From positions 55,862,001 to 55,926,000 of the forward strand of contig OZ038379.1 in the NCBI GenBank assembly GCA_964036045.1: DNA of 64,000 nucleotides. The letters are read 5' to 3'. A program made the translations under genes and the position numbers. Position 1 is the first letter of the stretch. Every line of letters starts with the position of its first letter. Of the stretch, positions 17,096 to 62,257 are shown in pieces. Source of the DNA: Eutreptiella sp. 'Long Island Sound 2002'. Taxonomy: Eukaryota; Protista; Euglenida. The notes below the pieces were generated by a model. The model was not told the origin of the DNA. It made no database searches and saw nothing but the letters and a program-made list of their open reading frames with translations.

Positions 17096-17254
17096 CTCGA
17101 GTTCTTTAAGTTTTTCGCGGACAGTCATCCATCCTAGGTACTGTTTTCCGGACTGAAAAGCCAGCGTACGCTCTTCAGCATCCCTGGCAGATGTGAATGC
17201 CCCAGTAATCTCACACACCCGGAGATCTTGATCTGGGTTATTGCTCTGCTTGGC
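17096..17254 (-). CDS. LUC7: LUC7-family U1 snRNP-associated splicing factor, internal exon (second zinc-finger region)
   Basis: 159 nt, phase 0-0, acceptor tttcag|G and donor GAG|gtgtgt. Translates AKQSNNPDQDLRVCEITGAFTSARDAEERTLAFQSGKQYLGWMTVREKLKELE, matching the LUC7 pattern KLRVCEVCxAYL..D.D.RL..HF.GK.H.G...IREKL.EL. Confidence 0.82.
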
Positions 17255-17924
17255 CTGAAATTGAAGAATGATGCCTGTGAGTTGCCATGGCTCAGGCCAA
17301 GTCCTAGATAGCTCCTGGATTCTTCTCCAATAGTCCTAATCTGTTACTCTGTTGTTTTTTTCCCTCGGCATTAGTAGGAAAGGCACCCCAGAGCTCTAGG
17401 CAGGAGGGAGTGCCTGTGGGCACCGGCTGATCTTGGTTGGGTGCTTGCAGCTGTAGAGCAACAACCACCCAGCACCTTTAAGCACCCACGTACTACATTC
17501 TCAACTCCATAAAATGCGCCGCCACAACGTGTTGACAGCCGTGGTGGCAAAGTGGGGTAGGGCTGTTTTGCCAGCATTGCAGTGCAGCCAAACAGCTCCT
17601 GGATGCTGCATCATCATTCACCTTTCCCTTGTGCCCCTTGGGGGAGACATGACAAGCACGTGATGTCTATGATTCGCACGCGTTGTGTGGCAGCTATGTG
17701 GTTTACAACTGGTTTGTGCGTATACTTGTGTCCACCTACCGCGCCGATTAGCAAGGACTTCTCATTTTGCCTGTACGCTTCGCTTCCCTGCTCATGCTTT
17801 AGATCTTGTTGCGATGGTTGTTGGTACTTCTTATCAGGGCAGTCCTTAACGAAGGAAAAAAAAAAGTGTTCCTGTATCCAGGTTTCCCAAAAAGGTCGCG
17901 TGTAGCTCATATGTTCAACCATGG

Positions 17925-18155
17925 TTGGTGGCGGTTGGCGGTTGGCGGTTGGTGACGATTGGTGGTTGGCAGTTGGCAACTGGCGGTTGGTGGCAGTTGG
18001 TGGTGGTTGGCGGTGGTTGGTGGTTGGTGATTGGTGGTTGGTGGCGGTTGGCAGTGGTTGGTGGTTGGCGGTTGGTCGCCGCTGGCCGTTGGCGGCGGTT
18101 GGTGGTTGACAGTTGGCGGCGGTTGGCGGCGGTTGGCGGTTGGCGGTTGGTGGTC
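17925..18155. repeat. (GGCGGTT/GGTGGTT)n degenerate microsatellite
   Basis: Direct inspection; the same motif occurs at ~25020-25215 and ~50775-50965. Confidence 0.9.
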
Positions 18156-18379
18156 CCTTTGGGCGGTCCTTAAGGGCAATCCTTAACAAAAAAAAATCTC
18201 GGTCCCAAAGGACCGCCCTGCTTCTTATTGGATGGGCGACACAATGGGGCTCTTTGCATGGCACCACAAGGTATGGGCCCTGCTGGCTGTGGCTTCTTCT
18301 TGGATGGGTGACACAACGGGGTTGGATGCAGCGCACCACAAGGTCTTGGAACTGCCGGCTGTGGTGTTGTCGTCGGGCA

Positions 18380-19480
18380 CGGCCTATGGTGCAACTAGGC
18401 ATGGTCCGCTGGATAGCTGGGAAACATTGGTGTGTGCGGTATGCATACACGATGGCTCCATTTCAGCAACAGGATGGGTTTGCCAGTTTGGGGTGTTGTG
18501 CCTAGGTTATAGTGTGCACCGCGGTGGTTTAGGGTGTGTTGTTATTGTGTCCCCTTGGTCTCGCTGGGCCTCGTCCAACTATGCACTTTACGGTTGTGGG
18601 TGTATTGGCGGGCCACCCCACCACACGGTTGGCTTCCTCATGTAAGGGCATTCTTGGTTGTTTAGTGGGCAGAGCTCCGGCAGCGGTAGTGGGCAACGTG
18701 GTTTCCATACTATTAGGATGTGCCGTTAGAGTGAGATCTCACCAGTGGCATGGATTTATGGTGCCGTATGGATGTCTTCCACCCTGCCGCCTTGCCCCAC
18801 CCCCCACCTTCCCGCCTGAGATACACAACCGCCCACACACACAAGCATTGCTTTTGGTTGGTGTCTTTGGCATGGCCCGTTGGATAGCTCATGGACGAGG
18901 GCGTGTGCGGTATGGTTGTGATTGACTTGAGTTGCATGCCGGGTCTGGCGTGCAGTGGTGTCGTGCCCAGGTTAGTGTGTGTGCCGCTGTGACTTAAGGT
19001 GCATTGTCATTGCATCACTTTGGTGTAGTTGGGGTTGGTCAGCCCTTCCGTTGTTGTGCATGCATTGGCGAGCCCTCTATGCAGCATGGGTTGGCTTTCT
19101 CGTGCAAGGACGTTCTGAGTCAAGTGAGTGGGTGGGGCTTGGTCAATAGTTGTGGGGCAACTTGACTACCGTACCACCCGGTTGCGCCATTGGAGTTCTC
19201 ACCGATGGCATAGATTTGTGGTACAGGTGGGATATTGTCTACCCGTCGCCTTGGTTGATCAGGTTGTCTTTGGTTGGTTAACCCCGTGGCATCTTTTCGC
19301 CGTCATGGCCGCTATCAAACTGGTGTGTGGATGTGTTGCGCCCGGGTTTGTGTGTGCATCGCTGTGACTACTTAGGGTGTATTGTTACTGGGTCGTGTTG
19401 GTGTCGTTGGGCCTGGTCGTTAGTTGCAACGTACGCCTGTGCGTGCATTGGTGAGTTGTCTATGCTACATGCAACTGCGC
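18380..19480. repeat. Degenerate ~450-480-bp tandem repeat
   Basis: CATGG(T)CCG..GGATAGCT...GTGTGCGG...GTG(C/T)CCAGGTT..TGTG...GCTGTGAC.TA.GGTG modules recur near 18400, 18870 and 19300. Confidence 0.5.
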
Positions 19481-20849
19481 AAACTAGTCATACGGCAATC
19501 ACGTTGCCCATAATAACCATTGCCCAACGCGCAACCATTGCTTGCCCACAACCCTAGCCGGAAGGCCCTTGTACGAGGAAGCCGGCCTTGTGGCCCACTA
19601 AACTAGCACGAAGGCCCTCACAGGAGGAAGTGAAGCTAGTGAGTATCACTTGTGGCGTACATTTGTGTTTCACTAAGACATTTTCCAGCCACCGGTCCCC
19701 CCCCCCATTGTGGCGTTTGGTTGGTCTCCCACGTGGGACCTTTTTGCTATATTGCGAGGCGGTACGCGTAAAGGCGGCAACGTACATTGGTTGGCTAGAG
19801 GATGTACGCGGAGTGGCTGCACTGTCCAGCGTTGGGGTTGGTGGGTTTTCCAACCCTGGGGACCAGGGGGAGAGCATTGTGGTTGGACCACTCCCCCCCA
19901 AAAGGCTCAATTGACAAGAATCCCCAAAACCAACCTGGGTGCTTCTGTGGTCTCAATGGAGGGGAAGGGGGGTGGAGGGGCAACTGTGACGGCCGAAGGG
20001 GGTGGGGGGGACTGTCCCAAGGGGTTGATTGGGGAGGATGGCATGAAGGGAGACACTTTGGTAGGGTTAGGGGACGGCTAAACAGAACCCAAACACTAAT
20101 CCTCACCTAAGGGAACACTTCCGTTGAGCTGCATGCACCACAAGGTAATGATAATTAGCTTCGGTGTCCACTATTAGGGGAAGGAATGACCAAACAAAAA
20201 AAATGTGCACGTTGATCTACTTACATCATGGCTCGTCACAGATGATATCCTCTAATCTACACCCCTCTCCCCAACTCTACGTGGCGGAGCATGGCTCTTG
20301 GTGGCCACAAGCGTGCACGCTAGAAAATGGCCTTGAAAGGATTTTGACCAGCTAAGACTTGGGTTTGATGGCCAAACCGGACCAAAACGGGCTCAAAATC
20401 AGCTCAATGCACTTGCTTGGGCATCCAAAGTGGTTGAGGACCACTTTTGGCAAACCGCGCTTTGACCCATTTTTGACCCAAAATTGGTCCAAAATAGCCC
20501 ATTTCCAAGGATTTTTGGTGGGTCATACCATTCCCAAATAGCCCAGGCTCAATCTAGTTGTTTTGGCGTGCCAAATGGTCTAAGACCATTTTTGGAAGAA
20601 ATGATTTTTCTACACCGCGTTGACATGGAGGGGCCGAAAGCTTCGACGCAACCTCACTATTTGCTGAGCCGGGCACCGTTACGGGAGTCTAGGCATGTTT
20701 CAGCGATTTGGAGGGGTGGAACCCACATAAAGAGGGGCCGTTGCGAGTAGACTAGTTAGTTGCCCAAAGTACCTTGGTTCTAGGGCCGCACAACCCAAAA
20801 TTGCACACATGTTGAGCATTTTGGACATTTTTTTGTGCATTTCTGGGAC

Positions 20850-22380
20850 ATACTATGAGTCAGATGGTAACAATAGGAAACCAAATTGGTTGCAGTCTAC
20901 ACCATCCGTGTCGAATGAGTTTCGGGAATATTTCAGGCAAAAATGGCTACTTTTTTTTTGGGGGGGGGGATTGCACACTTTTGGGAGGGCACCTTTGGAC
21001 TTGGCACCCGCGCCCCAGGTTGCCCAAGTGTCTGGGGGCTTACACGTAAAATTTGGGAAGGCCGTTTGTGAATGCAAAAGATGGCTAGAGGAGAGTGGAG
21101 CTCGAAACGGTGGGTGTGAGAGTTGGAGGGTTGTTGTATAATGCTTTTTGTGTATTCTAGGAGGCGCCAAAGAGAAGGGAAAAGAGTTGGGAGGCCAGGG
21201 GCACATGGGCTGAGAAGCCTGGGCCATGAAGGTGGGCAGTTTTGTCCATTTTGGCCCTTTCTAGGATGCGCAACCTAGGGGGAATTATCTCCCTAAATAT
21301 GATGTACTCTTGTGACCTCATGGAGAGATGGATGTTTGTATGATGCGTTTTGTGTACCCTAGGGGGCGGCAGAGAGAAGCAAAAAGATGGAAGGCCGGGG
21401 GCCCACAAACCCGAAGGATTTGGGCCGTGAGGGTGGGCATTTTTGTCCACTTTGGCCCAATTTAGGGTGCAGTCACTACAAGGGGGGAATTGTTTGGGAT
21501 GCCCTAAATGTGACATGCTCTTAAAAGTTGGTGGACACTTGGAAGGTTGTATATTGGCTTTTACGTACCATAGGCGGCACCAAAGAGAAGGGAAACGACT
21601 TGGGAGGCTGGGGGCACATGGGCCCAAAGCACCTAGGCCCCAAAGGTTGGACTTTCGCCACTTTGGCCCCTTCTAGGGTGCAGAAGCAAGGGGGAATCAT
21701 CTTGCGGGTGCTCCCTGAATTACGACGTACTGTTGTGAATTCATGGAGCTTCCAGATCGCAGCCACTTGCAGGTCCCCCATGCCCGGCAGGAGGGGCGGG
21801 TTGACAGTGTACCCTTTGCCCTTCCCGGCGCCCTGTTCAGTTGCCTTTCCGTTCAGAAATGGAAACTTGTGCTCATCACACTGGTCGATGTGAAGGCTGA
21901 TATGCTGCTTGGAGGGTTGTATAATGCTTTGAGTGCACCATAGGGGAGCGCGGAAGAGATGGGGCAAAGAAGTGGGAGGCCCGGGAGGACTTGGCCCGTG
22001 AAGGGTGGTAATTTTGTCCCCCTTGACCCATACTAGGGTGCAAAAGCAAGGGGAAATTATGCTGAGGTGGGGTGCCCGAGACATGACCTACTTCTTTGGG
22101 TGCATGGAAACTTGGAGGGTTGTATAATGATTTTTGTGTCTCCACGGGGTGCAAAAGAGAAGAGAAAAGAATTGTAAGGCCAATGCCACACCGGCTTTGA
22201 CGACTTGAGATGCCAAAATTCACTTTTTTGCCCACTTTAATAGTTTCCGGGGCGCACATGCAGGGGCTGTAGGGACACGGGCTTAGAGGACTTGGGCCGT
22301 GAAGTTTGGCAGTTTTGTCTGGGGGGCTGAATCCCGGTGTTAGAGGGAAGAGGTAAATATCTTGGGGTAACATATACTTG
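20850..22380 (+). repeat. ~200-bp satellite-like array
   Basis: TTTTGTCCACTTTGGCCC..CTAGGGTGCA...GGAGGGTTGTATAATGCTTTTTGTGTA...GAGAAGGGAAAAGAGTTGGGAGGCC-like units at ~21240, 21440, 21655, 22010, 22220. Confidence 0.8.
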
Positions 22381-22574
22381 ACGTAGGCTTGTCACCTTTT
22401 GGATGGGGGGGGGGGGGGTTAGCTTAAGGGCATATGTCACTGCGCCACTTGTCCTGCGTCCAACACTTTACCTTGAATTTTCCGAGAAAACATACTACAA
22501 AAATTAGGATTTTGCGTCCAAAAAATTTTGCGACATTTGATTGCGGGTGTCGCCGCGGGTCGTGTAGGCAACGC

Positions 22575-22690
22575 CGACACGAGCTGCGGGCAAAAGGAAA
22601 GGCACCCATGACGGGTCAGCCGTCTGGGGAAAACTTACATCAGCCGTGGGTAAAATTACGGGCACCCATGACGGGCAGAGGGGACGAAGT
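22575..22690. repeat. ~60-bp repeat family (second cluster at ~23925-24075)
   Basis: GAGCTGCGGG.AAAA...GCACCCATGACGGGTCA units occur at both locations. Confidence 0.55.
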
Positions 22691-24649
22691 ATACGAGACA
22701 AGAAAAACCAAAAAGAGGTGGGTGGTTGCACATCCACAATACGCGGGCCGCGTTGTGGGGTGGCCATGGCCGGTGGGGGTGGGGAAAGTTGGGGCAGGTT
22801 TGGGGACGGCAGGGCAAGGGTGGTTGCAGCGACAGCAGTTCGCGGAACACATTCTCAGCATCCCGTGATGATCATTCCCCCTTGTTGCCAACTTGTAGCA
22901 ATTTGGAAAGGTACCCCCACCCTGTTGGGGGGTGGGGTGGGGGGGCAGGGACATGGGGAGAAAGGGCAATGTTTGCGACGGACTAAAAGTATGCTTGGCC
23001 TTTATCCCTCTAGAAGAAGCCCGCAACCAAAATGACAATAGGGAGCAGGGTTGGAGAGGGGAAGCAGCTATGTGCATGGAGCGTGGCTTACTTATCTACT
23101 AATTGCTCAACCCTGCATGCGGCACCACAATGATCCGGACAGACGGTTGGGCGGGCCTCCTCCGTGTTGAACATGCTCCGCGCACGACCGCCCCGGTGCC
23201 CTCCAACTTTGGCGGTTCCGCTGGTCCGGGGCCCTCGTATTGGTAGTGCACCTCCTTGAGGTGTGTGCTGTCATCAGGTCCCGTGTCAGGCGTGGTGTGC
23301 TTCAGGAAGAAATGGTCGCTATTGTTTGGCAATTCAAACTTGTGGCACTGTGGAACGCAAAACGAGGCACGAAAAAGAGGCAAAAGGGAGCTTGTGTGAT
23401 TGTATCGGCCACAACCTCCACTTTGCACGGTCCCATGTGGCTGGTGTTCGGAAAACATGTGCAACAAGCACAAAACACAGCAAAGCACACCCAATTGTAA
23501 TAAATAGAGTGAAAAACACTTCATGTTGCACAAAAAGCGCACTTGTCCATGCGTTGCGGACCACACCAGTCCACCTGTCGTTCTTCCCTCCTAGCCACAA
23601 GGCTCTGCGGATTGCTGTCTTGAAAAGGGGTTGGGTTGGTTGCCAGCCCAACCAAAAAAGGGAACGAAAAATTTTGTCATCTCCATTAAAGAGTTCGGGG
23701 GGCAAGGGTCAACATGCAGTGTATGTGATAATTTTGTCGGGCAGAACATTGAAAAATCTTGCGCGAGTGGAGATGACATTCCATTTCACAGAAAGGAGCA
23801 TGCCGGTTGGACCTAAAGAGTACACTTTTCTCACCTTGCACAAACGTCACTGGAAAAGGGGGGGGGGGGGATAACAACATCCTTCTGGCATCCTTTTGTT
23901 TTGCCTCCTTTTCATGAATGCAAAGCCTACACGAGCTGCGGGGAAAATTACGCGCACCCATGAAGGGTCACCCATGTAGGCAAACCTACACGAGATGCTG
24001 GTGAAATTAAGGGTAGCGATGACGGGTCAACCGTGCAGAGAAAGCCTGCATGAGCTGCGGATAAAAGTATTGGCAAGCTTGATGAGGCGTTTGAAGGAAA
24101 TGGCCACTCAAATACCGTGGAAATTGACGGTGTGTTTTACGGTGAATTTTACATGTGGTTTGAACCCCGCCCTCTTGCATGGCGAAAATTGCGAAGCATG
24201 ATTTCGACGTACGACGAGCACTACAGCGACAAGTGGTGGTGGGGGGGGGGGGGGGTCAAGGGGGCTGTCAAGTTCGGTTTCTCGTCTTTGGGGGGCCCGG
24301 GCCGTGCGGGCAAGAAAGCTCACGACATGCACTCCCTCGGCGCAAGGGAGTAGCGGTTGTATGGCCCCTGTGGCTCGGAGGGCAACGGATGCACGCCGCT
24401 TTTGTGATGCAGGGGGCACCTCGGAAACAGCGGTGGTGGTGGTGGGGATAGCAAGAAAGTGTGTGTGTGGGGGGGGGGGAGCGTATGTAAATGTTTTTTT
24501 TTGCAATCAGTCGTGCAGATAACATGCCTCTGGCGAAACGGGCAACATTAGACATCTATAAAATGCAACAACGAGATTTGCAACCTTTTGATTTATGACT
24601 ACTTCCTACTTGATGCTAGGCAACAAGGCTGACCCGGAATCCCCAACAA

Positions 24650-24853
<204 letters not shown>

Positions 24854-26057
24854 TGTATTGCAATGTGGATGGTTTGCCTTGCTTTGTGACGTCTTGCACG
24901 GCATTGCAAAATAAACTAGTTTGGTAAGCAAGGCAGTGCTTAGCGCAAAAAAAAAAAGTTCTACATGGCTCTCCCCAAAAAGCCCGCCGGGGCACCATGT
25001 TTTGGTGGTGGGCGTTTGGCGGTTGGCGGGTGGCCACTAGCGGCTAGTGGCGGTTGTTGGTCGTTGGCGAAACTTGGTCGTTTAGGATTGGTGGTTGGCG
25101 GTTGGCGGTGGCTGGCAATTGGCAGTTGGTTGTTGCTGGCCGTTGGTGGCGGTTGGCGGCTGGTGGCTGGTGGCGGTTGATGGTTGATGGCGGCTCGTGA
25201 TTGGCGGTTGATGGTCCCTTGGGGCCGTTGCAAATGGCGGTCCGTCACAAAAAAAAAAACTAGTCCCCTAGAGAGCCCCATGTGCGAGGAATTGACGTGC
25301 TTGAGTTGGAACGATGTATAGCACTCACAGCAGCACCTGCTAGGCCATCAACAACGATGAAATGGTCTTTGTCACTATGTTTCGCGGTGCCAAGTGTGTG
25401 GCACACTTGTTGTGTATCAATATTGCAAATGGTGATACCCTTTGTGAATGCATGATAACGCTCCTTTTGATTGGCGTTGAACCGAGTGCATGTGGCCGTG
25501 TTTTGCCATATAGACCCCCTTCCCGCCCCTCTTACAAGGCAAGTAGGTGCCCAAAAATTCTATAAAACTATTCACTGGAGTACTACAAACAAGGAGGACG
25601 ACCTCTCTTTGATGCACTACAGCCCCATTTTTCTTCCATTCCCATGGGTCCAAACCTACATCCTGCTTGTTACCCTACGGAAGCGAACCTAATGTGAATT
25701 TCGCGCGAGTTTCGCGCCAAATTCACATTCGATGAATTCCCACATGATAAGACACAAGACAACATGGTATGCAAAACGAGAGATATCATTTCGTGAGATA
25801 GTTCCTGTGTCAACGCTGCCTCTTCCAGGTCCGGAACGGCTGCTGCAAAGTCTTAACATAGCCTAGTTCACTAAGTTCCTTTCGGCGCGCTCGAGCGGCA
25901 CGGAGTTGCACACCTATGGGGCCTTGGCCGCGCATGCTCCGCTTGGTGGGATCCCATCCGTCCCGGCTGAGACTATCATCAATGGTGCAGCAAGCCCAAG
26001 CTTCCCCGCAAGACTTAGGCGGCCCTATTACTTGGTGCCAAAATTGCCATAGTTCCA
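24854..26057. repeat. ~1.2-kb dispersed duplication, copy 1 (partner 50612-51777), anchored on (TA)n
   Basis: Starts TGTATTGCAATGTGGATGGTTTGCCTTGC in both copies; collinear high similarity through the GGCGGTT tract, the ATTGACGTGCT motif and the decayed ORF end. Confidence 0.9.
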
Positions 26058-28269
26058 AAATTCTATTTTTTCTTCGGTTTCTTACAGGAAATATTGATGG
26101 ATCCCCCCCGGCGACCAGGCGCCACGGGGGGTGCAGTTAAACCCTGGCCGGGGGGCAGCCGGGGCCTATCAGGCCCGCGCCCCCCGCGACATTTGGATTG
26201 GCCACCCGCGGTAGCAGCTCCTGCGGGGGCTGTGGGAGCGGTGGGCGGCCGCAGCGTGCTACTGACAGAGGGCGGCAAAACAAGCAGTACTTGGAGCGAC
26301 CCCAAGGTAACGACGACGGTGGAGAGGGTGAGGTGTCCCGCTGCTTGCTTCGCTTATTGTCGTGCTTCATGCTCTGCTTAGTGCGTGTACACACGGAGAG
26401 GGCAGGGGCAGGACAACCAGAAGAAAGGAGAGGATCAAGGCACAAGAGCGGCCCAAGGAACGCGCGTAGACACGGGGAGGGAGGAGTGGGGACGGGTTAG
26501 CAGGGACAGGTAGGGTGGGGCACGGGATGTCGTGCTACTTGCTTCGCTCAGTGTCGTGCGTCGTGCTCAGACGACGGGGGCAAGAGTAGGACAGGGGAAA
26601 AGGGCCACAACACAGACGGGGAAGCCCCCCCCCAACCCACGCACAGGAGCAGAACAAGCAAGAGGGTAGCGCGGGGGGTGTCGTGCGGATTGCTTCGCTC
26701 GGTGTCGTGCTATGTTCCTGATTGCTTGACCAGTGTGTACCCTGGGGTGACTACAGTTGGAATAGTGCCAGATGGGGGGCTAGCAGCGGACCCCGAGAGC
26801 TTCGAACGCCCGAGCAGGGCTGAGGTGCTGCACGCTCCGTGGGCTATGTGGGGTACTCTCGAGGGCCAAACCCTTGAGCTACTGCCGAAGGACGCTGTCA
26901 TGGACTATGGCGCCAGCAAGGGTGAGTGGTTCAACGCTGTGCACGCCCGGTCCATCCTTGCAGTGTTGGTCTACCGCGTTTTCCTAATGGGTGCCGTCGT
27001 AGAACAGGTGAGTGTCATGCGAATTGGTTGGATGATTGTCTTGCCTAGTGTTCTGCTTCGCGCGAGTACACAGAGGGGACAGGGGCAAGACCACCAGAGG
27101 GAGTGACGGACCGGGGCACCGGGGACGCCCAGGGTATAGGGCAAGCAGAGGGAGTGGGGAAAGGGCAATTGCCTCGCAAAGTGCTTTCCTCGGTGCGTGC
27201 TCGGGCAGAGGGAGCAGGGGTAGGAAAGGGAGAAGGGGCCTGGGCACAGGGGGGGGCAAAGCCCAACAAAGCAGGGCACAAGGGCAGAACAGGGAAGGGT
27301 GCGGTAGGGCAGGGGGCGTACACCACCCTTGGCACGGGCGAGCCGGAGGGAGAAGCCGGAGAGAGTGGGAGGCGGAAGCGGGGAGAGGGACGTAGAGAGA
27401 GCCGGCGGAGTGGGGAGCAGGGGTGCTGGCGTTCCAGGGGAGGGGCGGGGAGCAGGGCATGAAAGGCGAGCTTGCCGCGCTCGCTGTCGTGCTACTTGCG
27501 TGCCTGGACGTGCATGCTTGTACTGTGCGTGTGGCCTAGGGGGCTACTGGCTGTCAGAACGGGATGGCATCAGGGTCATGGTGGCCACGAGGAGTGCGGG
27601 CACCAGCGGCGCCATCCGCCCAGCCTCCCGTGCAGCAAGATGAGGTTGGGCTTGAATGGCGCGCAGAGGGGACACGTGCCATGGGCGCCATCCATTGGAC
27701 CCCCTGTGTCTGTGACAACGTGATGCATGAGTCTTGAGGCTCATGAACGTCAAGGAATGTGCGCAGAGGGGACGGGCACCAGCTGCGTCATCCGCTGGGG
27801 CCCCTGTGACAGGGACTATGCAACCTAATTAGGTGGCCGGGGGACGCCAAAAAACCCCCCGCCCGCCACCGCGCATCTCTGCCATAGGACCTCAGGGGCC
27901 ACCATCGCGCTCGAGGGTGCCAGAAACCCGCGGGGCGAGAGCGAACGGCCACTTTGTAGCCACCACTTCCAGCGGGCTGATATTGAGGCACTGGTATCAG
28001 GCTGCATGGAAGTGGACACATAGGCACAAGGGAAAGGAGGGGTTGTCGCCCCCCCCCCCCCCCCCCCCCCCGGGCTGTTAGGTGCCAACATAGGGGCCGT
28101 CCCCTCGACCAGGGCGGTGGATGGCGCAAGAAGCCTTCGTGGTGAACGGTAAGTCCTCCCCGCTGCCCGCACCTCTTCATCTTCCGTCTCCACCCGGGCA
28201 CGTACCTCCTCTAGTAAGTATGGGCACAGGAGGGAGCAGGCACGGGCCACTGACGACTCGGCCGAGACA

Positions 28270-30000
28270 AGGCGACTACCGCCATGGGTAACTAGGAAAC
28301 AGACACCCACTTGGTGCCCGCCTCCCGCCCTTATGCATGCCCCGTTGCTTTGCTTCGTGCTCGCTTGTTGCTCTATGCGCCTGCGGGTGGGACGAGAGGT
28401 TCCTGATAACACCCCCCTCACAGACCCCCCTACCCCGACGTGAGAAGAATGGGGGGGAGGGGGGCAAAAGACTTGCAAGTACCTTGAGCAACCGTGCCAA
28501 GCAAGAAGGCAAACGCAAAGCGGCCGCTCGGGGGGGGGGGGGGGGCAGCGGGCGGCGGGGCAGACGGGAAGAAGGACACCCTGGTGCAGGGAGAAAACCC
28601 GTTGTCCTACATATTGCTTCGCAACTTGCGTGTCCAACACCCAACCCAAATTCCGCCCTTGTCCTTACCTGCTATGCTCCATACGTGGGCCCGTGCAAAC
28701 AGGAGAGTAGAAAACGAGGCCCAATATGAGCCATGTTTGAGGTTAGAGAGACCCCACGTTCCCGCCAACAAAGACACGAAAGGAACCAGAAGGGGGGGGC
28801 GGTAGGCACGGAAGTAACCAGGGCGGCTAAGCCAAAGGAAAAAAAAACAACGGGAACAAGAGGGGCAAAGGCAGACGCACGGCGGCCGTCCGGGGAATGG
28901 GCGGGAGGAGGCGGGACAAGAGGGGAGAAAGGCACCCTAGGGCAAAGGGGTAACGCAATGTTGTGCACCCTGCCTCGCTTCGTGCGCGTCTAAAACAAAA
29001 CCCAACCCAATTCCCGCCCTTATCTGAACCTGCAGTGCTCCGTGCATGCGCCCATGCGGACAAGTGGGCAGAAAATAAGGCCCAACCCGATCCCCGCCAC
29101 CCCCATGGCCAGCACGGGCACAACCCAGATGGACCTAGACCAGGCGACTACCGCCATGGGTGACTAGGATACACACACACACACTTGATGCCCGCGTCCC
29201 AGCCCTATGCGTGCCCCGTTGCTTCGCTTCGTGCTCAGTTGTTGTTGTGTGTGACCGTGGATGGGAGGAGAGGCTCCTGGTAACTCCCCCTAGGCAGACC
29301 CCCCAACCCAGTCACGACAAGAACAGGGGGGGGGGGGGCAATAGACTCGCATGTAACTTGGGCAGCCATGCCAGGCAAAAAGGTCACTGGAACAGGTGAG
29401 TGTAGGCAAACGCAATGCGGCCGCCCGGGGAAGGGGCGGCAAGAGGCAGAGCAGGAGGAGAGAAGGACACCCAATGGCAGGAAGAAGACATAATGCCGTG
29501 CATATTGCCTCGCCACTCGCGTGTCCAGCTCCTAACCCATATCCCGCCCGTGTCCATGTCTGCTATGTTCCATGAGTGCGCCCGTGCAAACAAGAGGGTA
29601 GAAAGCAAGACCCTGGGTGTGCCTTGCCTGTGGGTGAGGGAGGCACATGGCTAACTCCCCCCAAGGCCCCTCGTACACCGACATGAAAGGAACCGGGAGT
29701 GGGGGCGGTAGGCTTGGAAGAAACCAGGGTGGCTAAACCGGGCACGAAAAGCCAAAGGAACAAGAGGGGCAAAGGCTAACGCACACCGGTTGCCCGGGGA
29801 ATGGACGGCACGAGGCGGAACTAGAGGGGCGAAGGCACCTTGGGAAGGAGGGGTAATGCATTGTCGTGCTACGTGCCCCGCTTCGTGTGCGTCCAGCCCC
29901 TAATCCAAATCCTGCCCTACTTCTTGCTTGCGATGCTCCGTGTGCGCCCATGCGAACACGTGGGCAAAAAACATGGCCCAGCCCATCCCCCGCCACCCCC
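28270..30000. repeat. ~870-bp tandem duplication with internal ~350-bp subrepeats
   Basis: AGGCGACTACCGCCATGGGT(A/G)ACTAGG at ~28270 and ~29142. The subunit TTG.....TGC.TCGC...GCGTGTCCA...CCCAA..CC.GCCC....CTGC..TGCTCC recurs four times. Confidence 0.75.
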
Positions 30001-54700: not shown

Positions 54701-55965
54701 CCATTCCAGAACACGGTAGTGAATATTTTCATCTACCAATATAGGAAAGCATTGCTATGTGTGTTGTTGTACCTCTTGAAATCCGTGTATCATAGAGACA
54801 AGGTCTAGGGTGGCTGACACTGTCAAGGCCAAGGAGGGCCATTAAGAGCTGTGTGTTGTATGTCCAAGGGGCAACTTACATATTTAAGGAGAACAGGATC
54901 TTCCATGAACGACTGCAGGGTGGGGGTGGTCAGGTTAAGAGGGGGGTGTTGGGGGGCAACCCATGGGTGGGGGGGGGGGGGGTGATGACAAGATCATCCT
55001 ACCACTTGGACTGGGAGGTTTGGCATCAGAAGGGGAGGGTGGAGTGGTCTTCCCTTTCAGGAATGTTAAATTTGTGAAAAGTAAGCATGTCACATCCCAA
55101 GGGGAGGATGACAAGGTTGTCCATCAGCCATTGGAAGGGGAGAGTGGAGTGGTCTTCCCTTGCAGGAATGACAACTTCCAGAATGTCAACTTCCAGAAGC
55201 GCGACGATGTCACATCCTAGGGGGAGGGTGACAGGGTTGTCCACAGGGTATACCTTCCACACCCCCTCCATGTGCTTACCTTGCCCGTGCCCCCGCATAA
55301 TTCCCAGAAAACTTTGCACATCTTCTCCCCCGGAATAAGCCTAACGGCTAAGATCCCTTGAATCACGCCCTTCAACCCTACGCTCAACCTTGTACTCCAG
55401 CAGCACACTTGAGTGCGCTCTGGAGATCTCATATCGATGTGCACGACCTCGGGGGGGGGGGGTTGTTGTTTTCTTGCCCATTCCACAATTGACCAAAAAT
55501 CGAGGTCATCGGAGTTGTAGGTGGCCTCCTCCAACTCATGTGCGAGTATGGGGCGGGACTGGTAGTGGCAGTGGGTGTCGGCGGAGGGATCTGGCACGGA
55601 CCTTAGCTGCGACAAGCGTTGCAACATCTCAGACATCTCAGAAACAAAGCTTTGTTGCATAGGGGACACATTGTGTGACATATGGGAAACACAGGTGAGA
55701 TGAATGTGAGATTTCTGCTAAATTCGTGCGAAATTGGTGTGACATTTGCGTTCGTCTAAATCATGTGAATGACCTGTGAATGCGAGGGTGAATGTAAGTT
55801 TTTGTGAATTTCAACATGGCACCAAAGTGTATTTTGGAAGTCCTTAGTTTTGTTGAACTTTAGGAGAAGAGAGCAAGCAGGCATGGTAGCAAGGCACAAT
55901 GTAAAGAATGAGTCCACAATCAATCAAATACGACGTGGATTCAAAAACGGGGCCCACAAAAGGTA
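51040..55965 (-). mobile_element. Unclassified transposon-like element, copy D
   Basis: GGGATTGACGTGCT near 51040; C-terminal ORF remnant at 51540-51775; decayed minus ORFs at 52816-54739 (VVFVNSGDSDAL, VLVDENIHYRVL); N-terminal remnant 55217-55681 and array 55670-55965 homologous to 12492-13380. Confidence 0.45.
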
Positions 55966-56689
55966 CATGTTATGGCACAATTGTTGCGGAATTGATTTGT
56001 CACATCCAAGTGCACATTGTTTTCCAATGGACAACATTATTGAGTCCTCATTTGAGACCCAATGGAGGCTATGCATTGGGAGCCGCCAAATATGCTATAA
56101 TTGACAGCGAAACCTCGCTTGCATTCATAGTACCTAATCGCCGCTTTGTGCCGCACCATACGCGTCATTTTGATCTTTTGGTAAAGTTCCGGAGTGTCAC
56201 CTACTTTTCGGGTGGGGAAGCTGGGCTGTAGCTTCTACCCCAAAGGCTCCTTGTCTAGCGATTTTCATCCTAGTCCATCGCAGCCTTGAGTTTAACTACT
56301 GCAACAAGTTGTTCTATCAAACTGTCCATCCTTTGAGCGCCAAGTCGTGCAAGATGAGGCAATATACAAATGTTGTTTGTTGTTGTTCTAAGATCACACC
56401 CTCAAAGCTTAGCCCCAGCGCGTGGTACCCAAGGGGTATGTCTCCTTAGGAGGCATTTTGGGAGGTGTGTCAAAGCCAGCCCTTGCGCGTAAACACGTTG
56501 GAAAAGTAGCGCACATCAGAGATACTTCCCCATACACCTCACACAACGCAAATGAGCACAACAACATCATGGAGCAATTCAATAGTTTTCAACGGCCATC
56601 TGCACCGACACATGCATCTACCTCTAGGTCCGCCCTTGAGTTACGCCTTGCCTTGCCAACAACGGAAGCAATATAACTATGAATGTCGT

Positions 56690-57330
56690 TGTGGACACGG
56701 TTGTCCGCACCATCCATCGCAGTAAAGTGGTAGTACTCCGGACTGTATATCTTGATTTTGTTGTCCTCAGACCCGTTAGGGGTCATTCAGCCACTGAAAT
56801 TCACAAGCAGGTCATTGAAACTGATTATTTTTTCTTCGCTCCCTCCCATGCCTCACCAACCCACTGGGTCATCGCAACTCTGTTCTTTCAGCTGTTGGTC
56901 CATGAGAAAACAACGTCTTCAAATTTACCTCACATGACATCGAGTCCTCAAAATCATTGCACGTTCATTTTCAACCACGGCTCCATTGCACCTCCGTTAA
57001 GGTGCAAAACGTCAATCGTGCGATTGGGAGTTAGTGGTTCAACATTTTTGGACCCCTCCATATCGCACCACGAAGAGCAATGCTCGTTTGAGCGACAATT
57101 TGATCGATGAATATGAATTCCTGTCGCCATGTCTCAACTATTAGATCCTCGGCCACAAGGTTGGTGTATAGCATCAAAAAGTCACCATCACCCCTGAAAG
57201 GGAACCTAACTCTAAGTGCAATCCTTTTGTCCCCCACCTCTTAATCACCAATGAATTCTAACATAGCAACAATAATGTCATCTACCTGAGGCATCCAACG
57301 CACAAGTTTGTGTGTAGGCCACCAACTGAA
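56690..57330 (-). pseudogene. Decayed pogo/Tigger-like (Tc1/mariner superfamily, DDE_1-type) transposase fragment
   Basis: FIFIDQIVAQT, TPNRTIDVLHL, RVAMTQWVGEAWE and NGSEDNKIKI resemble pogo catalytic and C-terminal motifs (WVGEAW; DGSED..I); multiple stops and frameshifts. Confidence 0.5.
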
Positions 57331-60319
57331 TTGGTAGCATGCCACATTGTGATGTTATGGGGGGAGCACTTGACACGGTGCGCGCGTGGTGTGGAGATTT
57401 ACCGGTCTCGCCTGACTAACTTAATGCAGGCCGATGAGCTTGAAGTGGATTTGCTGGAAAAGCCTCCAGCAGAGAACTTGGAGACAGAGGATTTTTGGAA
57501 CAAATCCCCACACATTATACCAAATTCAAACACATGCCTCAGATCTTCTACAAAGGTGATGCCCAAAAGTTAACAACAGTGAAAAGAGAGGATTGGGTGA
57601 GTGCATACAAGTTGAGTTTTCGATATGGGTGCTTTGAATACTAAAAAAAATTGACTTGTCGCAATGACAAGTCCCACCCATTCCTGCGGTCCCGGTGTGG
57701 TGGCTTGGAGTAATACCACCAAATGGTTCTTGGTAATGATGGAGAATAGTGATGGGTTGTGCACGGCCACAAATGATATAAATGAGCTGTGCTTCTCGCC
57801 ATTGATGCAATTTCCATTTGTGTGGACTTGGTGAGCGTGAACCCTTCAACAAACATCCAAAAAAAATTGTCTCTGTCTCATGTCGGGGGGAGGGTTAGGA
57901 TTAGCGGTCGAGGAAGCATTGTTTTTTGGACAGCCACTGGGGGTTGAAGGTCACAAGCAGCATCGCTGTTATGACAAGAAAATACAGCATGGTTGTGTTA
58001 GAACATAGAGAGAGCACGATTGTTGCTTTTTTGAAAAAATTGTACCGTTTTGTGGCAAAAAATAGTGCATCCGGGAGAAAAAACTTGTTGCGGGACTTTT
58101 TGTACGCAATTTTTTGGTAACAAAATTGGCCTCCAAATAAAAAAAGAAGGTATAGAAAGCACATCTTTTTCATGAGCCTCCGATTCTTCTCCTATAATAA
58201 AATGTATTTTGGAGTTGAGCCTGGGGCATTTGTCACATTTTTGGGTAGTCTTGAGCGGCATTTCTCATAAGATGATTTCTTATAAACAAGTCCGACTGGG
58301 TGCATTGTTCTAGCTAGCGGAGCAGGTGGCTGGAGAGGGGGCCGCCCCACATTTGCACTTGCCGCCGAATCCGGGGAGGGGGCCTCCCCATATCTGCACA
58401 TGCACCCTAGCCTCGGGAGCGATCACACTCCATTCATGCGGCTCAAAGTGACTCCTCAAGAACAGCACACCCCCTCACTACCCCAGAATGTGTTCTATGC
58501 TGGTTGGTCATGGTTTCCCATTGCTGAAAAGTCCCACACCCCCTACACGGGCAAGTCAAGTGCCGTGCATGGTGCACATGTATGGACATCTTCCGGACGC
58601 GCCGCCGTGTCAGGCTTAAGCTGTTGCGGCTTCACAGGTGGGCCTCACTCCTCTCCAACACTGTCGCACTAGACACCTTGAGGTAACCCATGAAACTTAT
58701 CCTGTACGAGACCCTTGCAATACTTTGGGGAAATCAGCCACAATTCGGCCGGATGATGTAGGCTAATAGCTCATAACGCAATGCCACAAGAGTGAAGCAA
58801 GTAGATGCACCACACATCACTTCCAGTGCAAAGGTGGGGATACAGACTTCCTCTTTGTTCAACCATGACATGCCCTCCACTTGCGTTTTTGTTGACTTTC
58901 CTTGCGATTCTTTCCAACCGCAACATTTGCCCCCCCCCCCCCCCTTGGGGTGAAATATCACTTGCCAAAGTATAATTTGTCCCCCCCCCCCCCACTCGTG
59001 CAGTGAAGCTTGTGAATGAAAAATACAACGTCGTGTGCATCTTTTTTTTATAGTCGGGTAGTGTGATCTCTTCTTGCAGTAAAATAGTGTCTTTTTAAAA
59101 AAAAAAACTAAACACTTCTAAAATCACTGTTGGTGTGTGTAATTTTCTTTTGCGATAAAGCTCCATAATATATTGAATTGCCAAAGACTATAAAGACAAT
59201 ATGTTTCTGCAATAATGGCACATTTGCAAAGTGTACCATTGCAAGTTTCGTACGGCAACCAATAGCGACTTTAACGATGGGACACCGTGTCCACAAAGCA
59301 CAACCTCCTCTGTGGACAACGGCGAACATAAGAATTTGGAGGCCTAACAAAGGTTAGCTACCTATGAGAGGTAGGTAGCTTGTACATCTCAGACCAAAGT
59401 GGCAGGTTGTACACAAGTTATACACTGCTACAAGCTAGCTGTCGCTCTAAAAAACCGGTAAGAAAAAAACGTGAACAATGTGCTCAACACACAGAACGAG
59501 GAGAATGGCCACTACAAGCACATGCGTTCAAAAGAAACGGCACATAAAAAACCACACTTGTAAACCCCGCCTTTGAAGCAACAAATCAGTGGAGGAAATA
59601 AAGGAACACAACAAGAGTACAAAACGAGCATCCGCTACAAGCAATTGCAGAACGCAAAATTTTCAAATCATCTTCAGTGCTAGAATAGGAAAACTTTCCA
59701 CCACGATTGGTGTTCTGCTCACAAGCCTGCTACAAACGACTAGTTCAGCTCATTGATGAACTACTAATCACGCTCCAAATGTCCGGTTGCATTTTTTCAG
59801 CACGTATCCGGCACTAGGACCCACTTTCCACGGATGAAGAGCTGCTAACGAATGTCCAGCTCTGTGTCAAGAGTGGTCATGCAAGGTTGCCGCTGAGGCT
59901 CTAGGCCTTCCATGCTTCGCTCGGAGGAGGCATCCTTGCCTTTGAGCGGGATGGGGGTGGCTTGAACACTCTCCTCGGTCTTAGCAAATGCATCTTGAAC
60001 TTGGGTGCTTGGGGGTGAGGGAGGAGGGCACAAAAACTCAGTCGCCCTTTGCGAATCATCACCGGGAGCTTGAATGATCTGCACAGAGCAATCGGCATTA
60101 TCAATGCTAAATGCATACCTCTCAAAACCTGGAGGCTTTGGGGTGAGGCGAACCTGTTCAAGAGAACCTTGTGGTGTGTAGGATATGAAAACCACAAGAC
60201 CAACCGCCCTTTTGGAATCGCAATGCCCCGCGCTTGGTTGTAAAGCGGTGCCGCGTGGGCTCCGCTAAGAAAGGGCAGATCAAAGCAACAGAGCTCAAGA
60301 GTTCCCAGTGTCCCAGGGT

Positions 60320-60660
60320 CCCAGTGACTAGCACAGGGAGAAAATCAGAGATGGCCCACATCTGGGCAAAATGGGGACATAATCCCGACCTTCTCGGGGG
60401 TCCCCCTTAACTAGCGGGGGGGGGGGGGGGATGAGAAGTGGCTACCTCACCCCTGCCGTCTCGGGGGCCCAAATTTGGGCGATATGGCTGCATAACGCTT
60501 GCCCGCTCGGGGTCCCTTGGGGGTTCCTGGTGCGCGTACGGAACCAAAGACGCGACATAACCCATGCCGTCATGGACTCCACATGTGGGCAGATTGGCTA
60601 CATAACCCGTGCCGTCTTGGGGGTCCTGAAAGCGGGGACAAAATCAGAAATGGCTACTAA
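60320..60660. repeat. Degenerate ~60-70-bp tandem repeat
   Basis: GGCTACATAACCCCTGCCGTCTCGGGGGTCCC-like units recur about 5 times. Confidence 0.7.
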
Positions 60661-60679
60661 CGAACAATTTTCTATTCGT

Positions 60680-60990
60680 TGTAAGTGCGAGTAATTTTTT
60701 TGTTTGCCGCATATGCGAGTACAAAAAATCGTGAATCCGTGTAATTTCTTTAGGAGTAGCTGCAAATACGAAACAATCGCACATTGTGTAATTTTTTGCA
60801 GTACACGCGAGTACACGAAAATTGTACGACATGGGTTTTTTTTTTGCTGTAAACGCAAGTACCCGGTTTATGCAATACTCGCCAAAACAATTTTTGGCCG
60901 CTTGCATTTACGGCAGAGGAAAAAATCGGGGTGACATTTTGTTGGTACTCACATTTACCGCAAAAAACAATACACAACTTACAACAAGCA
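60680..60990. repeat. Cluster of short GTAAA(T/C)GC(G/A)AGTAC-like motifs in both orientations
   Basis: Examples: TGTAAGTGCGAGTA, CATATGCGAGTAC, GTACACGCGAGTAC, GTAAACGCAAGTAC and reverse TACTCACATTTAC. Confidence 0.6.
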
Positions 60991-62177
60991 CAGAAAATTG
61001 TAAAATGGGGAAAAGATCTGCGAGGGGTCAAACCAGCAACGATTTTTAATTCATTGATGATAACCTATGAGAGGCTGAAAGCATCGTACAATGAAAGCAA
61101 ACAACCGGCAGTGTGCAGTTGGCAGACCAAAGAAATGTCTAGGTAACACACAATGAGGATGACAACCGCCTTGTACCCTCTGCAAAATGCAGCTAAACAA
61201 ACGAGGAACATGACTACCATCAACAACATGGACAAAGAAGAAACAACAGGCAGCATCTCCATTCTTCATCTCACATAGAAATTACCTTGATGCCAGGCAC
61301 ACATGCACAGGTGCATACCTCACAGTTGTGATGCACGTCGGAAAGAATCAAGCAGAAAGCGGCCCAAAACGAGACACAACATCACATACCTCTGTTGTGC
61401 AACACATAGGTTGCAATTTGGTTTCACAACCTGGTGCACTGGACAACTCATTCAAGAACAGACCGCAGAACGTTTGGTATTGTACAGAGAATCAAAATGG
61501 GTGCCCGCAGCGCTTGGCACCACGTGGATCTGTTAAAAACTTGTCAAGTGGAATGCAATGTGCACGTTCAAATTAAATTGAACACTCACCATTGCATGTA
61601 AGTGTTCTGGAGCACTACACTGACCAGGGTATTGCTCAGTGACCCGGGGGGGGGGGCTGGGGGTTAATTTGGGCCTCGGCCAGGGCTCACCCACCCACCC
61701 ACCCACCCACCCACCCACCCATCCAACCCTACCTGTGCCCTCCACCCAGAGTCTCATACAAGCACTTGATTGAGAAGCCCCCATTGGCTGTAGTTCGGAG
61801 GAAGGACGCCACACCGTGCGGGTACTTGTTGTCGTCCCCTACTGCCGGAAAACAGGGGGTTAGTAAACACCCATTTTCTCCACTGCTGCCGCCATTTGCG
61901 CTTGCAGGAAGCAAGCGTGCACCATATCAAATGTCACAGTATCAAACAATATTTGTCCATCAATATTTGTAAAATGGAAAAAAACAGTTCTTAGAATCTG
62001 CAATTCCTATTTCCTGGAAATTTCTGCTGCTGTTTTACAAACATACTCTGCGTCCGCCCAAGATATGACCACATCATCTATGCACGGAAGATGACATATG
62101 AAATATCCCTGTTAAGCTGGCAATCCCATTGAAAAACAACAGAATCACATGCACCATGTATATTCAGCAGCACATAC

Positions 62178-62257
62178 ATAGACATCAGAAAGCCGTTTCT
62201 TCAGAGTTTCGATCTTTGTCACAATGGCCTGCGACTTTGACACATCTCCAGCTTCTC
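62178..62257 (-). CDS. LUC7: LUC7-family splicing factor, internal exon (coiled-coil before zinc finger 2)
   Basis: 80 nt, phase 1-0, acceptor ttttgcag|GA and donor TAT|gtatgt. Translates (G)EAGDVSKSQAIVTKIETLKKRLSDVY, matching the LUC7 pattern GxEGxVxESQxxxxxVEKx(R/K). Confidence 0.7.

What the first reader, a model, noticed from the sequence alone, without database searches (positions are those of the whole stretch)
17096..62257. LUC7-like splicing-factor gene split by a ~45-kb transposon-filled intron
Seen: two minus-strand exons with canonical splice sites join in phase 0 to give ...GDVSKSQAIVTKIETLKKRLSDVY|AKQSNNPDQDLRVCEITGAF.... Established: in LUC7 proteins the GxVxxSQ helix precedes LRVC by roughly 35-40 residues; here the distance is 34. 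Inference: nearly the whole window is one intron, a giant-intron gene architecture that the six-frame ORF track does not reveal.
Basis: partly seen in the sequence, partly recalled or inferred. Interest (0 to 1): 0.75.

Follow-up and report, generated by a model that had tools for sequence, protein, structure and literature searches.

The report
Euglenid LUC7-like gene, 45-kb intron
Two small exons of a LUC7-type splicing-factor gene, most likely from a Euglena-like alga, lie 45 kb apart and fit together exactly as in the nearest known relative, so one very long intron is the best reading, but no RNA evidence was available.

Summary
Exon A (62257..62178, minus) and exon B (17254..17096, minus) have CAG acceptors and GT donors and join in phase 0. 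Exon B alone passes Pfam's LUC7 threshold (E 4e-11).

The nearest relative is a transcriptome-derived protein of the euglenid Rhabdomonas costata (about 70% identical). Its 27 residues just before the exon-B-like part were slid over all 127,840 six-frame positions of the window. The best fit by far is exon A, ending exactly at the GT donor. No second copy of either exon exists in the window.

The N gap (47687-47886) lies inside the intron, and its two flanks overlap by about 153 nt at 98.7% identity. The contigs therefore abut. A single conventional intron of 44,923 nt is the best reading, but it is inferred, not shown by RNA.

"Transposon-filled" is only partly supported. The interval holds one decayed LINE-like element, old dispersed repeats, long (AT)n and satellite arrays, and stray gene fragments (LHC, deacetylase).

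The second zinc finger keeps only one of four zinc ligands. The Rhabdomonas protein shares this exact pattern, so it is lineage divergence rather than decay.

This is an ordinary kind of gene. The intron is about 5 times longer than the longest in the published E. gracilis set. The window is not human.

The parts
62178..62257 (-). Exon A of the LUC7-like gene (80 nt: 2 nt completing a Gly codon plus 26 codons). It encodes the helix with the G-D-V-x-K-S-Q motif that precedes zinc finger 2.
   Evidence: Sequence and translation. tblastn hits from LUC7 proteins P0104 (E 0.003) and P0094 (E 0.03). Rank 1 of 127,840 positions for the homologous 27-mer of P0001, flush with the donor.
17096..17254 (-). 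Exon B of the LUC7-like gene (159 nt, 53 codons). It encodes the zinc-finger-2-like module, with C, T, F, Y at the four ligand positions.
   Evidence: Pfam PF03194 at E 4.2e-11, above the cut-off. Yeast Luc7 5zwn_Y at E 1e-3 with alignment. 129 homologues in the big search, best P0001 at 71% identity. Ligand table.
17255..62177 (-). Inferred conventional GT-AG intron of 44,923 nt, including 200 N. If the overlapping gap flanks are collapsed it is about 44.57 kb.
   Evidence: GTATGT at the 5' end and TTTCAG at the 3' end. No other LUC7 exon lies between. Removal by splicing is inferred, not shown.
47687..47886 (.). Assembly gap inside the intron, flanked by a duplicated stretch of about 153 nt (47533-47686 and 47887-48038).
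   Evidence: 98.7% identity, and the unit occurs nowhere else in the window.
37805..40472 (+). Decayed LINE-like element inside the intron: an apurinic-type endonuclease ORF (37805-38719), and a downstream ORF (39564-40472) with a Cys/His knuckle near its C-terminal end.
   Evidence: Pfam Exo_endo_phos PF03372 at 24.5 bits, equal to the cut-off, E 2.6e-5. Translations. No RT domain was detected.
24650..26061 (+). Copy 1 of a repeat unit of about 1.4 kb that begins with (AT)n. Its partner is at 50408-51778 (90.5% identical, direct orientation). Together they bracket the GC-rich block at 26-50 kb. A third, diverged copy lies at 9909-10471.
   Evidence: Self-BLAST.
50408..51778 (+). Copy 2 of the same repeat unit.

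Best explanation
The window comes from a euglenid nuclear genome, probably a photosynthetic Euglena-like species, and it is not human. It carries part of one LUC7-family gene on the minus strand. Exon A (62257..62178) and exon B (17254..17096) are consecutive coding exons, separated by one conventional GT-AG intron of about 44.6-44.9 kb. The spliceosome would have to pair the GTATGT donor at 62177 with the TTTCAG acceptor at 17255. The intron grew by accumulating repeats: a LINE-like element, an unclassified 1.4-kb repeat family, other old dispersed repeats, (AT)n arrays of up to 1.2 kb, a 50/251-nt GC-rich satellite, and fragments of unrelated genes. The rest of the gene was not found in the window. 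The N-terminal part with zinc finger 1 presumably lies beyond position 64000. The encoded protein belongs to a divergent LUC7 branch whose second zinc finger has lost three of four zinc ligands. Shown here: the exons, their signals and phase, their family membership, their collinearity with a transcript-derived euglenid protein, the absence of alternative copies, and the contig overlap at the gap. Inferred: that the two exons are actually spliced together, that the gene is active, and that the protein still acts with U1 snRNP.
For: Exon B passes the Pfam LUC7 gathering score on its own. The closest protein among 1.84 billion representatives is P0001 (E 1.3e-16, 71% identity). P0001 is Rhabdomonas costata RCo012321 from EukProt, and the R. 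costata protein set was predicted from the transcriptome (PMC8219788). In P0001 the exon-A-like and exon-B-like parts abut. Its 27 residues before the junction align without gaps to exon A as the single outlier in the whole window (44 against 27) and end exactly at the donor. An HMM built from 153 LUC7 homologues places exon A at profile positions 199-237 and exon B at 242-297, in order and adjacent. No other LUC7-like piece occurs on either strand. The donor after exon B is GTGTG and the donor after exon A is GTATG. Both acceptors are CAG. These fit the E. gracilis conventional-intron consensus GTGTG...CAG (PMC11170887). The gap flanks overlap. Both exons sit in sequence with no in-window repeat copy. 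The ligand pattern C-T-F-Y is shared only with P0001, which argues for lineage divergence under constraint rather than random decay.
Against: There is no transcript evidence. No same-species protein was found in the collections, and there were no related loci in metagenome contigs. At 44.9 kb the intron is about 5.5 times the longest GT-AG intron (8,197 nt) in the published E. gracilis set, whose mean is 512 nt (PMC11170887, Table 1). The polypyrimidine tracts here are T-rich, whereas that paper reports C-rich tracts. No upstream or downstream LUC7 exon was found in the window, so the intactness of the gene is unknown. The interval contains other isolated gene fragments (deacetylase, LHC), which shows that stray exon-like pieces occur in this region.
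Confidence: 0.6

Rival explanations
1. The locus is a dead or dying copy. The two exons are the remains of a LUC7-like gene that was torn apart by tens of kb of insertions and is no longer spliced productively. A working paralogue would lie elsewhere in a large, repeat-rich and possibly polyploid genome.
For: No other exon of the gene is recognisable in 64 kb. The same interval carries clearly damaged fragments of other genes: an LHC unit with an internal deletion and Arg to Pro in the conserved helix, and a lone 46-codon deacetylase-like piece. The intron length is far outside the published range (PMC11170887).
Against: Both exons are open. All four splice signals are intact and fit the euglenid consensus. 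Exon B keeps 37 of 53 residues identical to a distant euglenid. The unusual ligand substitutions are shared with that expressed homologue, so they are not decay. The missing exons may simply lie outside the window, since only 1.7 kb is available upstream.
Confidence: 0.2
2. The exons belong to one live gene, but the 45-kb distance is an assembly artefact. A mis-join, a wrongly placed contig or an expanded repeat block would have inflated a shorter intron.
For: The interval contains a scaffold gap. A 24-kb block of 63-73% GC sits between flanks of 45-52% GC and is bracketed by two direct copies of a 1.4-kb repeat. There are kilobase (AT)n arrays and a satellite. All of these are classic sites of assembly error.
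Against: The contig ends on both sides of the gap overlap by about 153 nt at 98.7%, in a unit found nowhere else, which supports that join. Even without the 24-kb GC-rich block, the intron would still be about 19-20 kb.
Confidence: 0.12
3. Each exon splices to nearer, unrecognised partners. There could be extra lineage-specific exons inside the interval, or the two exons could belong to separate transcripts, for example with exon B trans-spliced downstream of a nested gene.
For: Euglenids use SL trans-splicing and many nonconventional introns whose borders cannot be read from sequence: 72% of introns in E. agilis (PMC12501133). An exon-like deacetylase piece with cag|...|gt borders lies on the same strand inside the interval.
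Against: In the expressed R. costata homologue nothing lies between the two parts. The phases match (0/0). Any extra exon would have to be absent from the relative.
Confidence: 0.08

Closest known systems
Rhabdomonas costata RCo012321 (EukProt EP00906 P008672; P0001 here)
   Same: It is about 70% identical over exon B. The exon-A-like helix sits directly in front with identical spacing. The C-T-F-Y pattern at the four zinc-ligand positions is the same.
   Different: It is a 114-residue transcriptome-derived protein, possibly partial. Its gene structure is unknown and no genomic locus could be fetched. Exon A is only about 30% identical to it.
Yeast Luc7p and human LUC7L, LUC7L2, LUC7L3 (Pfam PF03194), which are U1 snRNP-associated 5' splice-site factors
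   Same: The window matches the family profile above threshold. It has the same order of a helix with a G-x-V motif followed by the zinc-finger-2 module. The AlphaFold model of the euglenid homologue keeps two helices, a beta-hairpin and a long helix.
   Different: The canonical C-x2-C...H-x5-H ligands are C, T, F, Y here. Zinc finger 1 and an RS-type tail were not found in the window. The fold search against PDB was not significant: Luc7 chain 5zwn_Y reached only E 2.8.
Diatom and green-algal LUC7-like proteins with a degenerate second finger (e.g. Cyclotella cryptica HJC23_003655; the Pyramimonas obovata 'Luc7-like protein' A0A7S0N5A5)
   Same: They are about 59% identical over exon B and share the G-K-Q-Y-x-G-W core and loss of the second Cys and last His (pattern C-S-H-Y in 172 of 228 proteins).
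   Different: They keep the first His. Their region before the finger is unlike exon A. They are a different lineage.
Conventional GT-AG introns of Euglena gracilis (PMC11170887)
   Same: GT...CAG termini. One donor is GTGTG and the other GTATG, against the consensus GTGTG.
   Different: The published set has a mean of 512 nt and a maximum of 8,197 nt, and it reports C-rich polypyrimidine tracts. Here the intron is 44,923 nt and the tracts are T-rich.

Membership tests
LUC7 family (Pfam PF03194) | Match to the family profile at or above the curated gathering score | tested here: met
   Exon B alone scores 43.5 bits against a cut-off of 33, E 4.2e-11, profile positions 179-229 of 246.
LUC7 family (Pfam PF03194) | Helix with a G-(D/E/N)-V-x-x-(S/A)-Q-type motif about 35-40 residues before the second finger | tested here: met
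   Exon A. tblastn hits from P0104 and P0094. Rank 1 of 127,840 against the P0001 27-mer. The offset of 34 is identical to that in P0001.
LUC7 family (Pfam PF03194) | Second zinc finger with four zinc ligands (C-x2-C ... H-x5-H) | tested here: not met
   The alignment to yeast Luc7 gives C, T, F, Y. Among 228 homologues, 34 are CCHH, and only P0001 shares CTFY.
LUC7 family (Pfam PF03194) | N-terminal CCCH zinc finger 1 | tested here: inconclusive
   An HMM of 153 homologues and ungapped scans find no such exon in the window. Only 1.7 kb lies upstream of exon A, so it may be outside.
LUC7 family (Pfam PF03194) | Association with U1 snRNP and an effect on 5' splice-site choice | not testable with these tools
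   This needs biochemistry or genetics in the source organism.
Conventional (spliceosomal GT-AG) euglenid intron | GT at the 5' end, CAG at the 3' end, and a donor close to GTGTG | tested here: met
   GTATGT ... TTTCAG for the A-B intron. The next donor is GTGTGT. The consensus comes from PMC11170887.
Conventional (spliceosomal GT-AG) euglenid intron | C-rich polypyrimidine tract, and length within the documented range (41-8,197 nt) | tested here: not met
   The last 20 nt before the two acceptors hold 10 T and 3 C, and 8 T and 5 C. The length is 44,923 nt.
Conventional (spliceosomal GT-AG) euglenid intron | Removal demonstrated by a transcript | not testable with these tools
   No same-species transcript or protein was obtained.
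Nonconventional euglenid intron | CAG near +3 and CTG near -8, with pairing of the two ends and no GT-AG requirement | tested here: not met
   The ends read GTATGTGCTG... and ...CAATTTCAG. Neither motif is at the stated positions (PMC12501133, PMC11170887). Pairing of the two ends was not computed.
Non-LTR (LINE) retrotransposon, as filler of the intron | Apurinic-type endonuclease plus a reverse-transcriptase domain | tested here: inconclusive
   The endonuclease scores exactly at the Pfam cut-off (24.5 bits). No RVT family was found in any of the 50 long ORFs scanned.

The most novel reading that the evidence does not exclude
Euglenids carry a LUC7 paralogue whose second finger has dispensed with zinc (C-T-F-Y, conserved between this genome and Rhabdomonas). 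This change might be tied to their unusual splice-site repertoire: a GTGTG donor consensus and a majority of nonconventional introns. The gene for this factor would itself depend on removal of a conventional intron about 5 times longer than any in the published E. gracilis set. That would make it a natural test case for how the euglenid spliceosome pairs sites across 45 kb of repeats.
Probability: 0.12. Interest if true: 0.55.

Novelty: new member of a known kind. Interest (0 to 1): 0.3.

Why it matters
If the splice is real, conventional euglenid introns can reach about 45 kb. That is far beyond the 8.2 kb maximum of the published E. gracilis set, which was drawn from a fragmented draft. It would also show that gene models in these 1.5-2.4 Gb, repeat-rich genomes cannot be found from ORF tracks or short-range spliced alignment. 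In addition, the window documents a euglenid LUC7 branch with a zinc-ligand-poor second finger, a small but concrete lead on how 5' splice-site recognition differs in this lineage. Otherwise it is an ordinary gene with a long intron.

Tried and rejected
- **Same-species proteins.** Word searches with exon B, P0001 and the finger region of a diatom homologue found no protein that would show the junction. Only P0001 itself and diatom proteins came back.
- **Locus of P0001.** The look-up of its encoding contig returned nothing.
- **Metagenome contigs.** Two scans, one with exon B and one with the exon B/P0001 alignment, found nothing.
- **Other LUC7 exons.** I ran tblastn of 228 homologues, an HMM of 153 homologues, and ungapped scans with the N- and C-terminal parts of P0001. 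None found further LUC7 exons in the window.
- **Pfam scans of long ORFs.** Of the 50 long ORFs scanned, 48 lie in the interval. They gave only a LINE-type endonuclease at threshold, an LHC fragment and a sub-threshold deacetylase fragment. No RT, integrase or transposase appeared.
- **Translated self-comparison.** tblastx of the GC-rich element at 1.7-4.7 kb against the intron gave only noise.
- **RNA genes.** Rfam and tRNA scans were empty.
- **Fold search.** The AlphaFold model of P0001 against PDB was not significant.
- **Euglena spliceosome paper.** Its supplements list a LUC7L homologue (OP185557) but hold no sequence to compare.
- **Rejected: chance ORF.** The statistics rule this out.
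- **Rejected: pseudogene inferred from lost zinc ligands.** The same substitutions occur in the expressed Rhabdomonas homologue.
- **Rejected: human origin.** The nearest relative is a euglenid and the donors fit the euglenid GTGTG consensus.
- Each exon was searched separately, by reference.
Full report
**1. The observation**

- Exon A is 62257..62178, 80 nt. It is preceded by ...TTTTGCAG and followed by GTATGT. Two nucleotides complete a Gly codon, and then 26 codons end in phase 0.
- Exon B is 17254..17096, 159 nt = 53 codons. It is preceded by ...AATTTCAG and followed by GTGTGT.
- The offset from the G of GDVSKSQ to the L of LRVC across the join is 34 residues, as stated.

**2. The gap, tested first**

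The N run at 47687-47886 lies 14.3 kb from exon A and 30.4 kb from exon B. It is inside the putative intron, so reading frame is not an issue. The last 154 nt before the gap (47533-47686) match the first 152 nt after it (47887-48038) at 98.7%. This unit occurs nowhere else in the window. That is what two unmerged, overlapping contig ends look like. The flanks are most likely continuous, and the true distance is about 350 nt shorter than written. A short tandem duplication cannot be excluded.

**3. What the exons are**

Exon B alone passes Pfam's curated threshold for LUC7 (PF03194: 43.5 bits against 33, E 4.2e-11, profile positions 179-229 of 246). It also aligns to yeast Luc7 from U1 snRNP structures (5zwn_Y, E 1e-3).

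The word search found nothing. Family membership alone left the orthologue open, so I used the one exhaustive search on exon B.
- It returned 129 proteins with E up to 0.001.
- Only one is close: P0001, 114 aa, 71% identical, E 1.3e-16.
- P0001 is Rhabdomonas costata RCo012321 from EukProt. The R. costata protein set was predicted from its transcriptome (PMC8219788).
- The next hits, at about 59% identity, are diatom LUC7-like proteins.

Several observations point to a euglenid source, probably a photosynthetic one:
- the closest homologue is a euglenid protein;
- the donors read GTGTG and GTATG, and GTGTG is the E. gracilis conventional-intron consensus (PMC11170887);
- a chlorophyll a/b-binding fragment lies in the window.

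I do not take the contig for human.

**4. The test of the join**

In P0001 the exon-B-like part is directly preceded by a helix that resembles exon A. I took the 27 residues of P0001 that precede its exon-B-like part and slid them, ungapped, over every position of all six frames of the window, 127,840 positions in all.
- The best score is 44, at 62178..62258 on the minus strand.
- The runner-up scores 27. The mean is -28.8 and the sd 10.9.
- The alignment ends exactly at the last codon before the GT donor.

Independent checks agree:
- An HMM built from 153 LUC7 homologues places exon A at profile positions 199-237 and exon B at 242-297. The exon A match on its own is marginal (E 7.6).
- tblastn of all 228 fetched homologues finds only these two sites.
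- There is no second copy of either exon anywhere in the window.

Therefore either 17255..62177 is one intron (44,923 nt including the 200 N), or the true partner of exon B lies even further away, or the gene is broken. The step of searching the joined model was left out.

**5. What could not be shown**

- No protein or transcript of the source species itself was found.
- No euglenid locus turned up in metagenome contigs.
- P0001 has no genomic record.
- The N-terminal LUC7 exons (zinc finger 1) and any C-terminal exons are not detectable in the window. Only 1.7 kb is available upstream of exon A.

Splicing, expression and intactness therefore remain inferences.

**6. What fills the interval**

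Composition
- The flanks at 17-26 kb and 50.6-62 kb have 46-56% GC.
- A block from 26 to 50 kb has mostly 61-73% GC, broken by (TA)n/(AT)n arrays.
- This block is bracketed by two direct copies of a 1.4-kb unit that starts with (AT)n: 24650-26061 and 50408-51778, 90.5% identical. A third, diverged copy lies at 9909-10471.

Tandem arrays
- (AT)n of 1.2 kb at 45800-47007.
- (AT)n of 0.66 kb at 49956-50616.
- (TA)n at 43598-43885.
- A 50/251-nt GC-rich satellite at 48367-49515.
- Several tandem duplications of 270-870 nt.

Dispersed repeats
- About 25% of the interval has a diverged copy (65-79% identity) elsewhere in the same 64 kb.

Protein signals. I scanned 50 long ORFs against Pfam, 48 of them inside the interval. 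Three signals appeared:
- An apurinic-type endonuclease at exactly the cut-off (37835-38722, plus strand). Downstream of it is an ORF with a Cys/His knuckle near its C-terminal end, as in LINE ORF2.
- An LHC fragment at about 26714-26998 (plus strand). It has an internal deletion and Arg to Pro in the conserved helix.
- A lone 46-codon deacetylase-like piece at 21904..21767 (minus strand) with cag|...|gt borders.

No reverse transcriptase, integrase or transposase domain was found. "Transposon-filled" is thus a fair guess for part of the interval, but it is demonstrated only for one decayed LINE-like element. "Repeat- and debris-filled" is more accurate.

**7. The protein**

Aligned to yeast Luc7, the four zinc ligands of the second finger (C-x2-C...H-x5-H) read C, T, F, Y. 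Across the 228 homologues the patterns are:

| Pattern | Number of proteins |
|---|---|
| C-S-H-Y (diatoms, also Pyramimonas) | 172 |
| Canonical C-C-H-H | 34 |
| C-C-H-Y | 14 |
| C-T-F-Y | 1 (only P0001) |

The rest are rare or unaligned patterns.

Because the expressed Rhabdomonas protein has the same three substitutions, they reflect an old lineage-specific change and not pseudogene decay. An AlphaFold model of P0001 (pLDDT 85) keeps two helices, a beta-hairpin and a long helix, which is the finger-like topology. A fold search against PDB was not significant, and Luc7 chain 5zwn_Y reached only E 2.8. The locus therefore passes the profile test for LUC7 membership but fails the zinc-ligand test. 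A role with U1 snRNP is an inference from family membership.

**8. How it most likely works**

The pre-mRNA is transcribed through about 45 kb of repeats. U1 recognises the GTATG donor after exon A, and the CAG acceptor with its pyrimidine tract before exon B is used. This would be ordinary U2-type splicing, only over an unusually long distance for this lineage. The signals are not those of nonconventional euglenid introns (PMC12501133, PMC11170887).

Points against:
- The length is 5.5 times the maximum (8,197 nt) of the published E. gracilis GT-AG set, whose mean is 512 nt (PMC11170887, Table 1).
- The pyrimidine tracts are T-rich rather than C-rich (PMC11170887).

Long introns are still plausible in genomes of this size and repeat content. 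E. gracilis has 2.37 Gb with 58.8% repeats (PMC11252322), and E. agilis has 1.54 Gb (PMC12501133).

**9. Rivals**

| Reading | Confidence |
|---|---|
| One live gene with a real intron of about 45 kb | 0.60 |
| A relic gene pulled apart by insertions | 0.20 |
| A real gene whose intron length is inflated by mis-assembly in the GC-rich, repeat-bracketed block | 0.12 |
| Nearer unrecognised partners, or separate transcripts | 0.08 |

The presence of other stray gene fragments in the interval keeps the relic reading alive. Intact signals, open frames, 70% identity to a distant relative and shared ligand changes argue against it.

**10. Verdict**

This is a new member of known kinds (a LUC7-family gene, a long spliceosomal intron). 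It is of modest interest, mainly as a marker that euglenid conventional introns may be far longer than documented, and as a record of a zinc-ligand-poor LUC7 branch. No step needed referral.

Noticed in passing
window 21767-21904 (-): A lone 46-codon piece resembling the histone-deacetylase/HDLP fold (Pfam PF00850 E 1.9e-5, below the cut-off; PDB 1c3p_A E 4.8e-5). It has exon-like borders (cag| ... |gtggct), sits inside the LUC7 intron on the same strand, and is flanked by repeats that also occur at 13.6-14.7 kb. It could be a real exon of a nested gene or a stray fragment; this was not resolved.
   Followed up: partly
window 26714-26998 (+): A chlorophyll a/b-binding (LHC) fragment (Pfam PF00504 23.9 bits against a cut-off of 22.3; PDB LHCII chains down to E 2e-10). 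It has an internal deletion of about 16 residues and Arg to Pro in the conserved helix, so it is probably a pseudogene piece. It lies on the opposite strand inside the intron.
   Followed up: partly
window 17096-17254 (-): The second zinc finger of this LUC7-like protein keeps only 1 of 4 zinc ligands (C-T-F-Y). Among 228 homologues, only the Rhabdomonas costata protein shares that exact pattern. Diatom and Pyramimonas relatives are C-S-H-Y.
   Followed up: yes
window 47533-47686 and 47887-48038: The sequences on the two sides of the 200-N gap are the same stretch of about 153 nt (98.7% identical). This looks like an unmerged contig overlap rather than a real gap.
   Followed up: yes
window 26000-50000: A 24-kb block of mostly 61-73% GC lies between flanks of 46-56% GC. 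It is bracketed by two direct copies (90.5% identical) of a 1.4-kb unit that starts with (AT)n (24650-26061, 50408-51778). It could be a composite element, a large insertion or an assembly feature; this is unresolved.
   Followed up: partly
window 45800-47007, 49956-50616, 43598-43885, 24650-24858: Very long (AT)n/(TA)n microsatellite arrays, up to 1.2 kb, sit directly beside extremely GC-rich sequence.
   Followed up: no
window 48367-49515: A GC-rich satellite: 23 copies of a 50-nt unit organised in a 251-nt higher-order period, 91-96% matching.
   Followed up: no
window 2587-4445 (+): A GC-rich (about 70%) run of frame-shifted ORFs that by eye carry reverse-transcriptase-like motifs of a non-LTR element. 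The two main ORFs (2587-3444, 3633-4253) gave no Pfam hit at E up to 0.1. It lies outside the intron.
   Followed up: partly
window 12473-14690 vs 21118-22233 and 54916-55980: Old dispersed repeats (65-74% identical) are shared between the region downstream of exon B and the intron. They belong to unclassified families.
   Followed up: no
window 17084-17095 and 62166-62177 (-): The donor sites read GTGTGT and GTATGT, fitting the unusual GTGTG consensus reported for Euglena gracilis conventional introns rather than the GTAAGT/GTRAGT of most eukaryotes. The pyrimidine tracts are T-rich, unlike the C-rich tracts reported for E. gracilis.
   Followed up: partly
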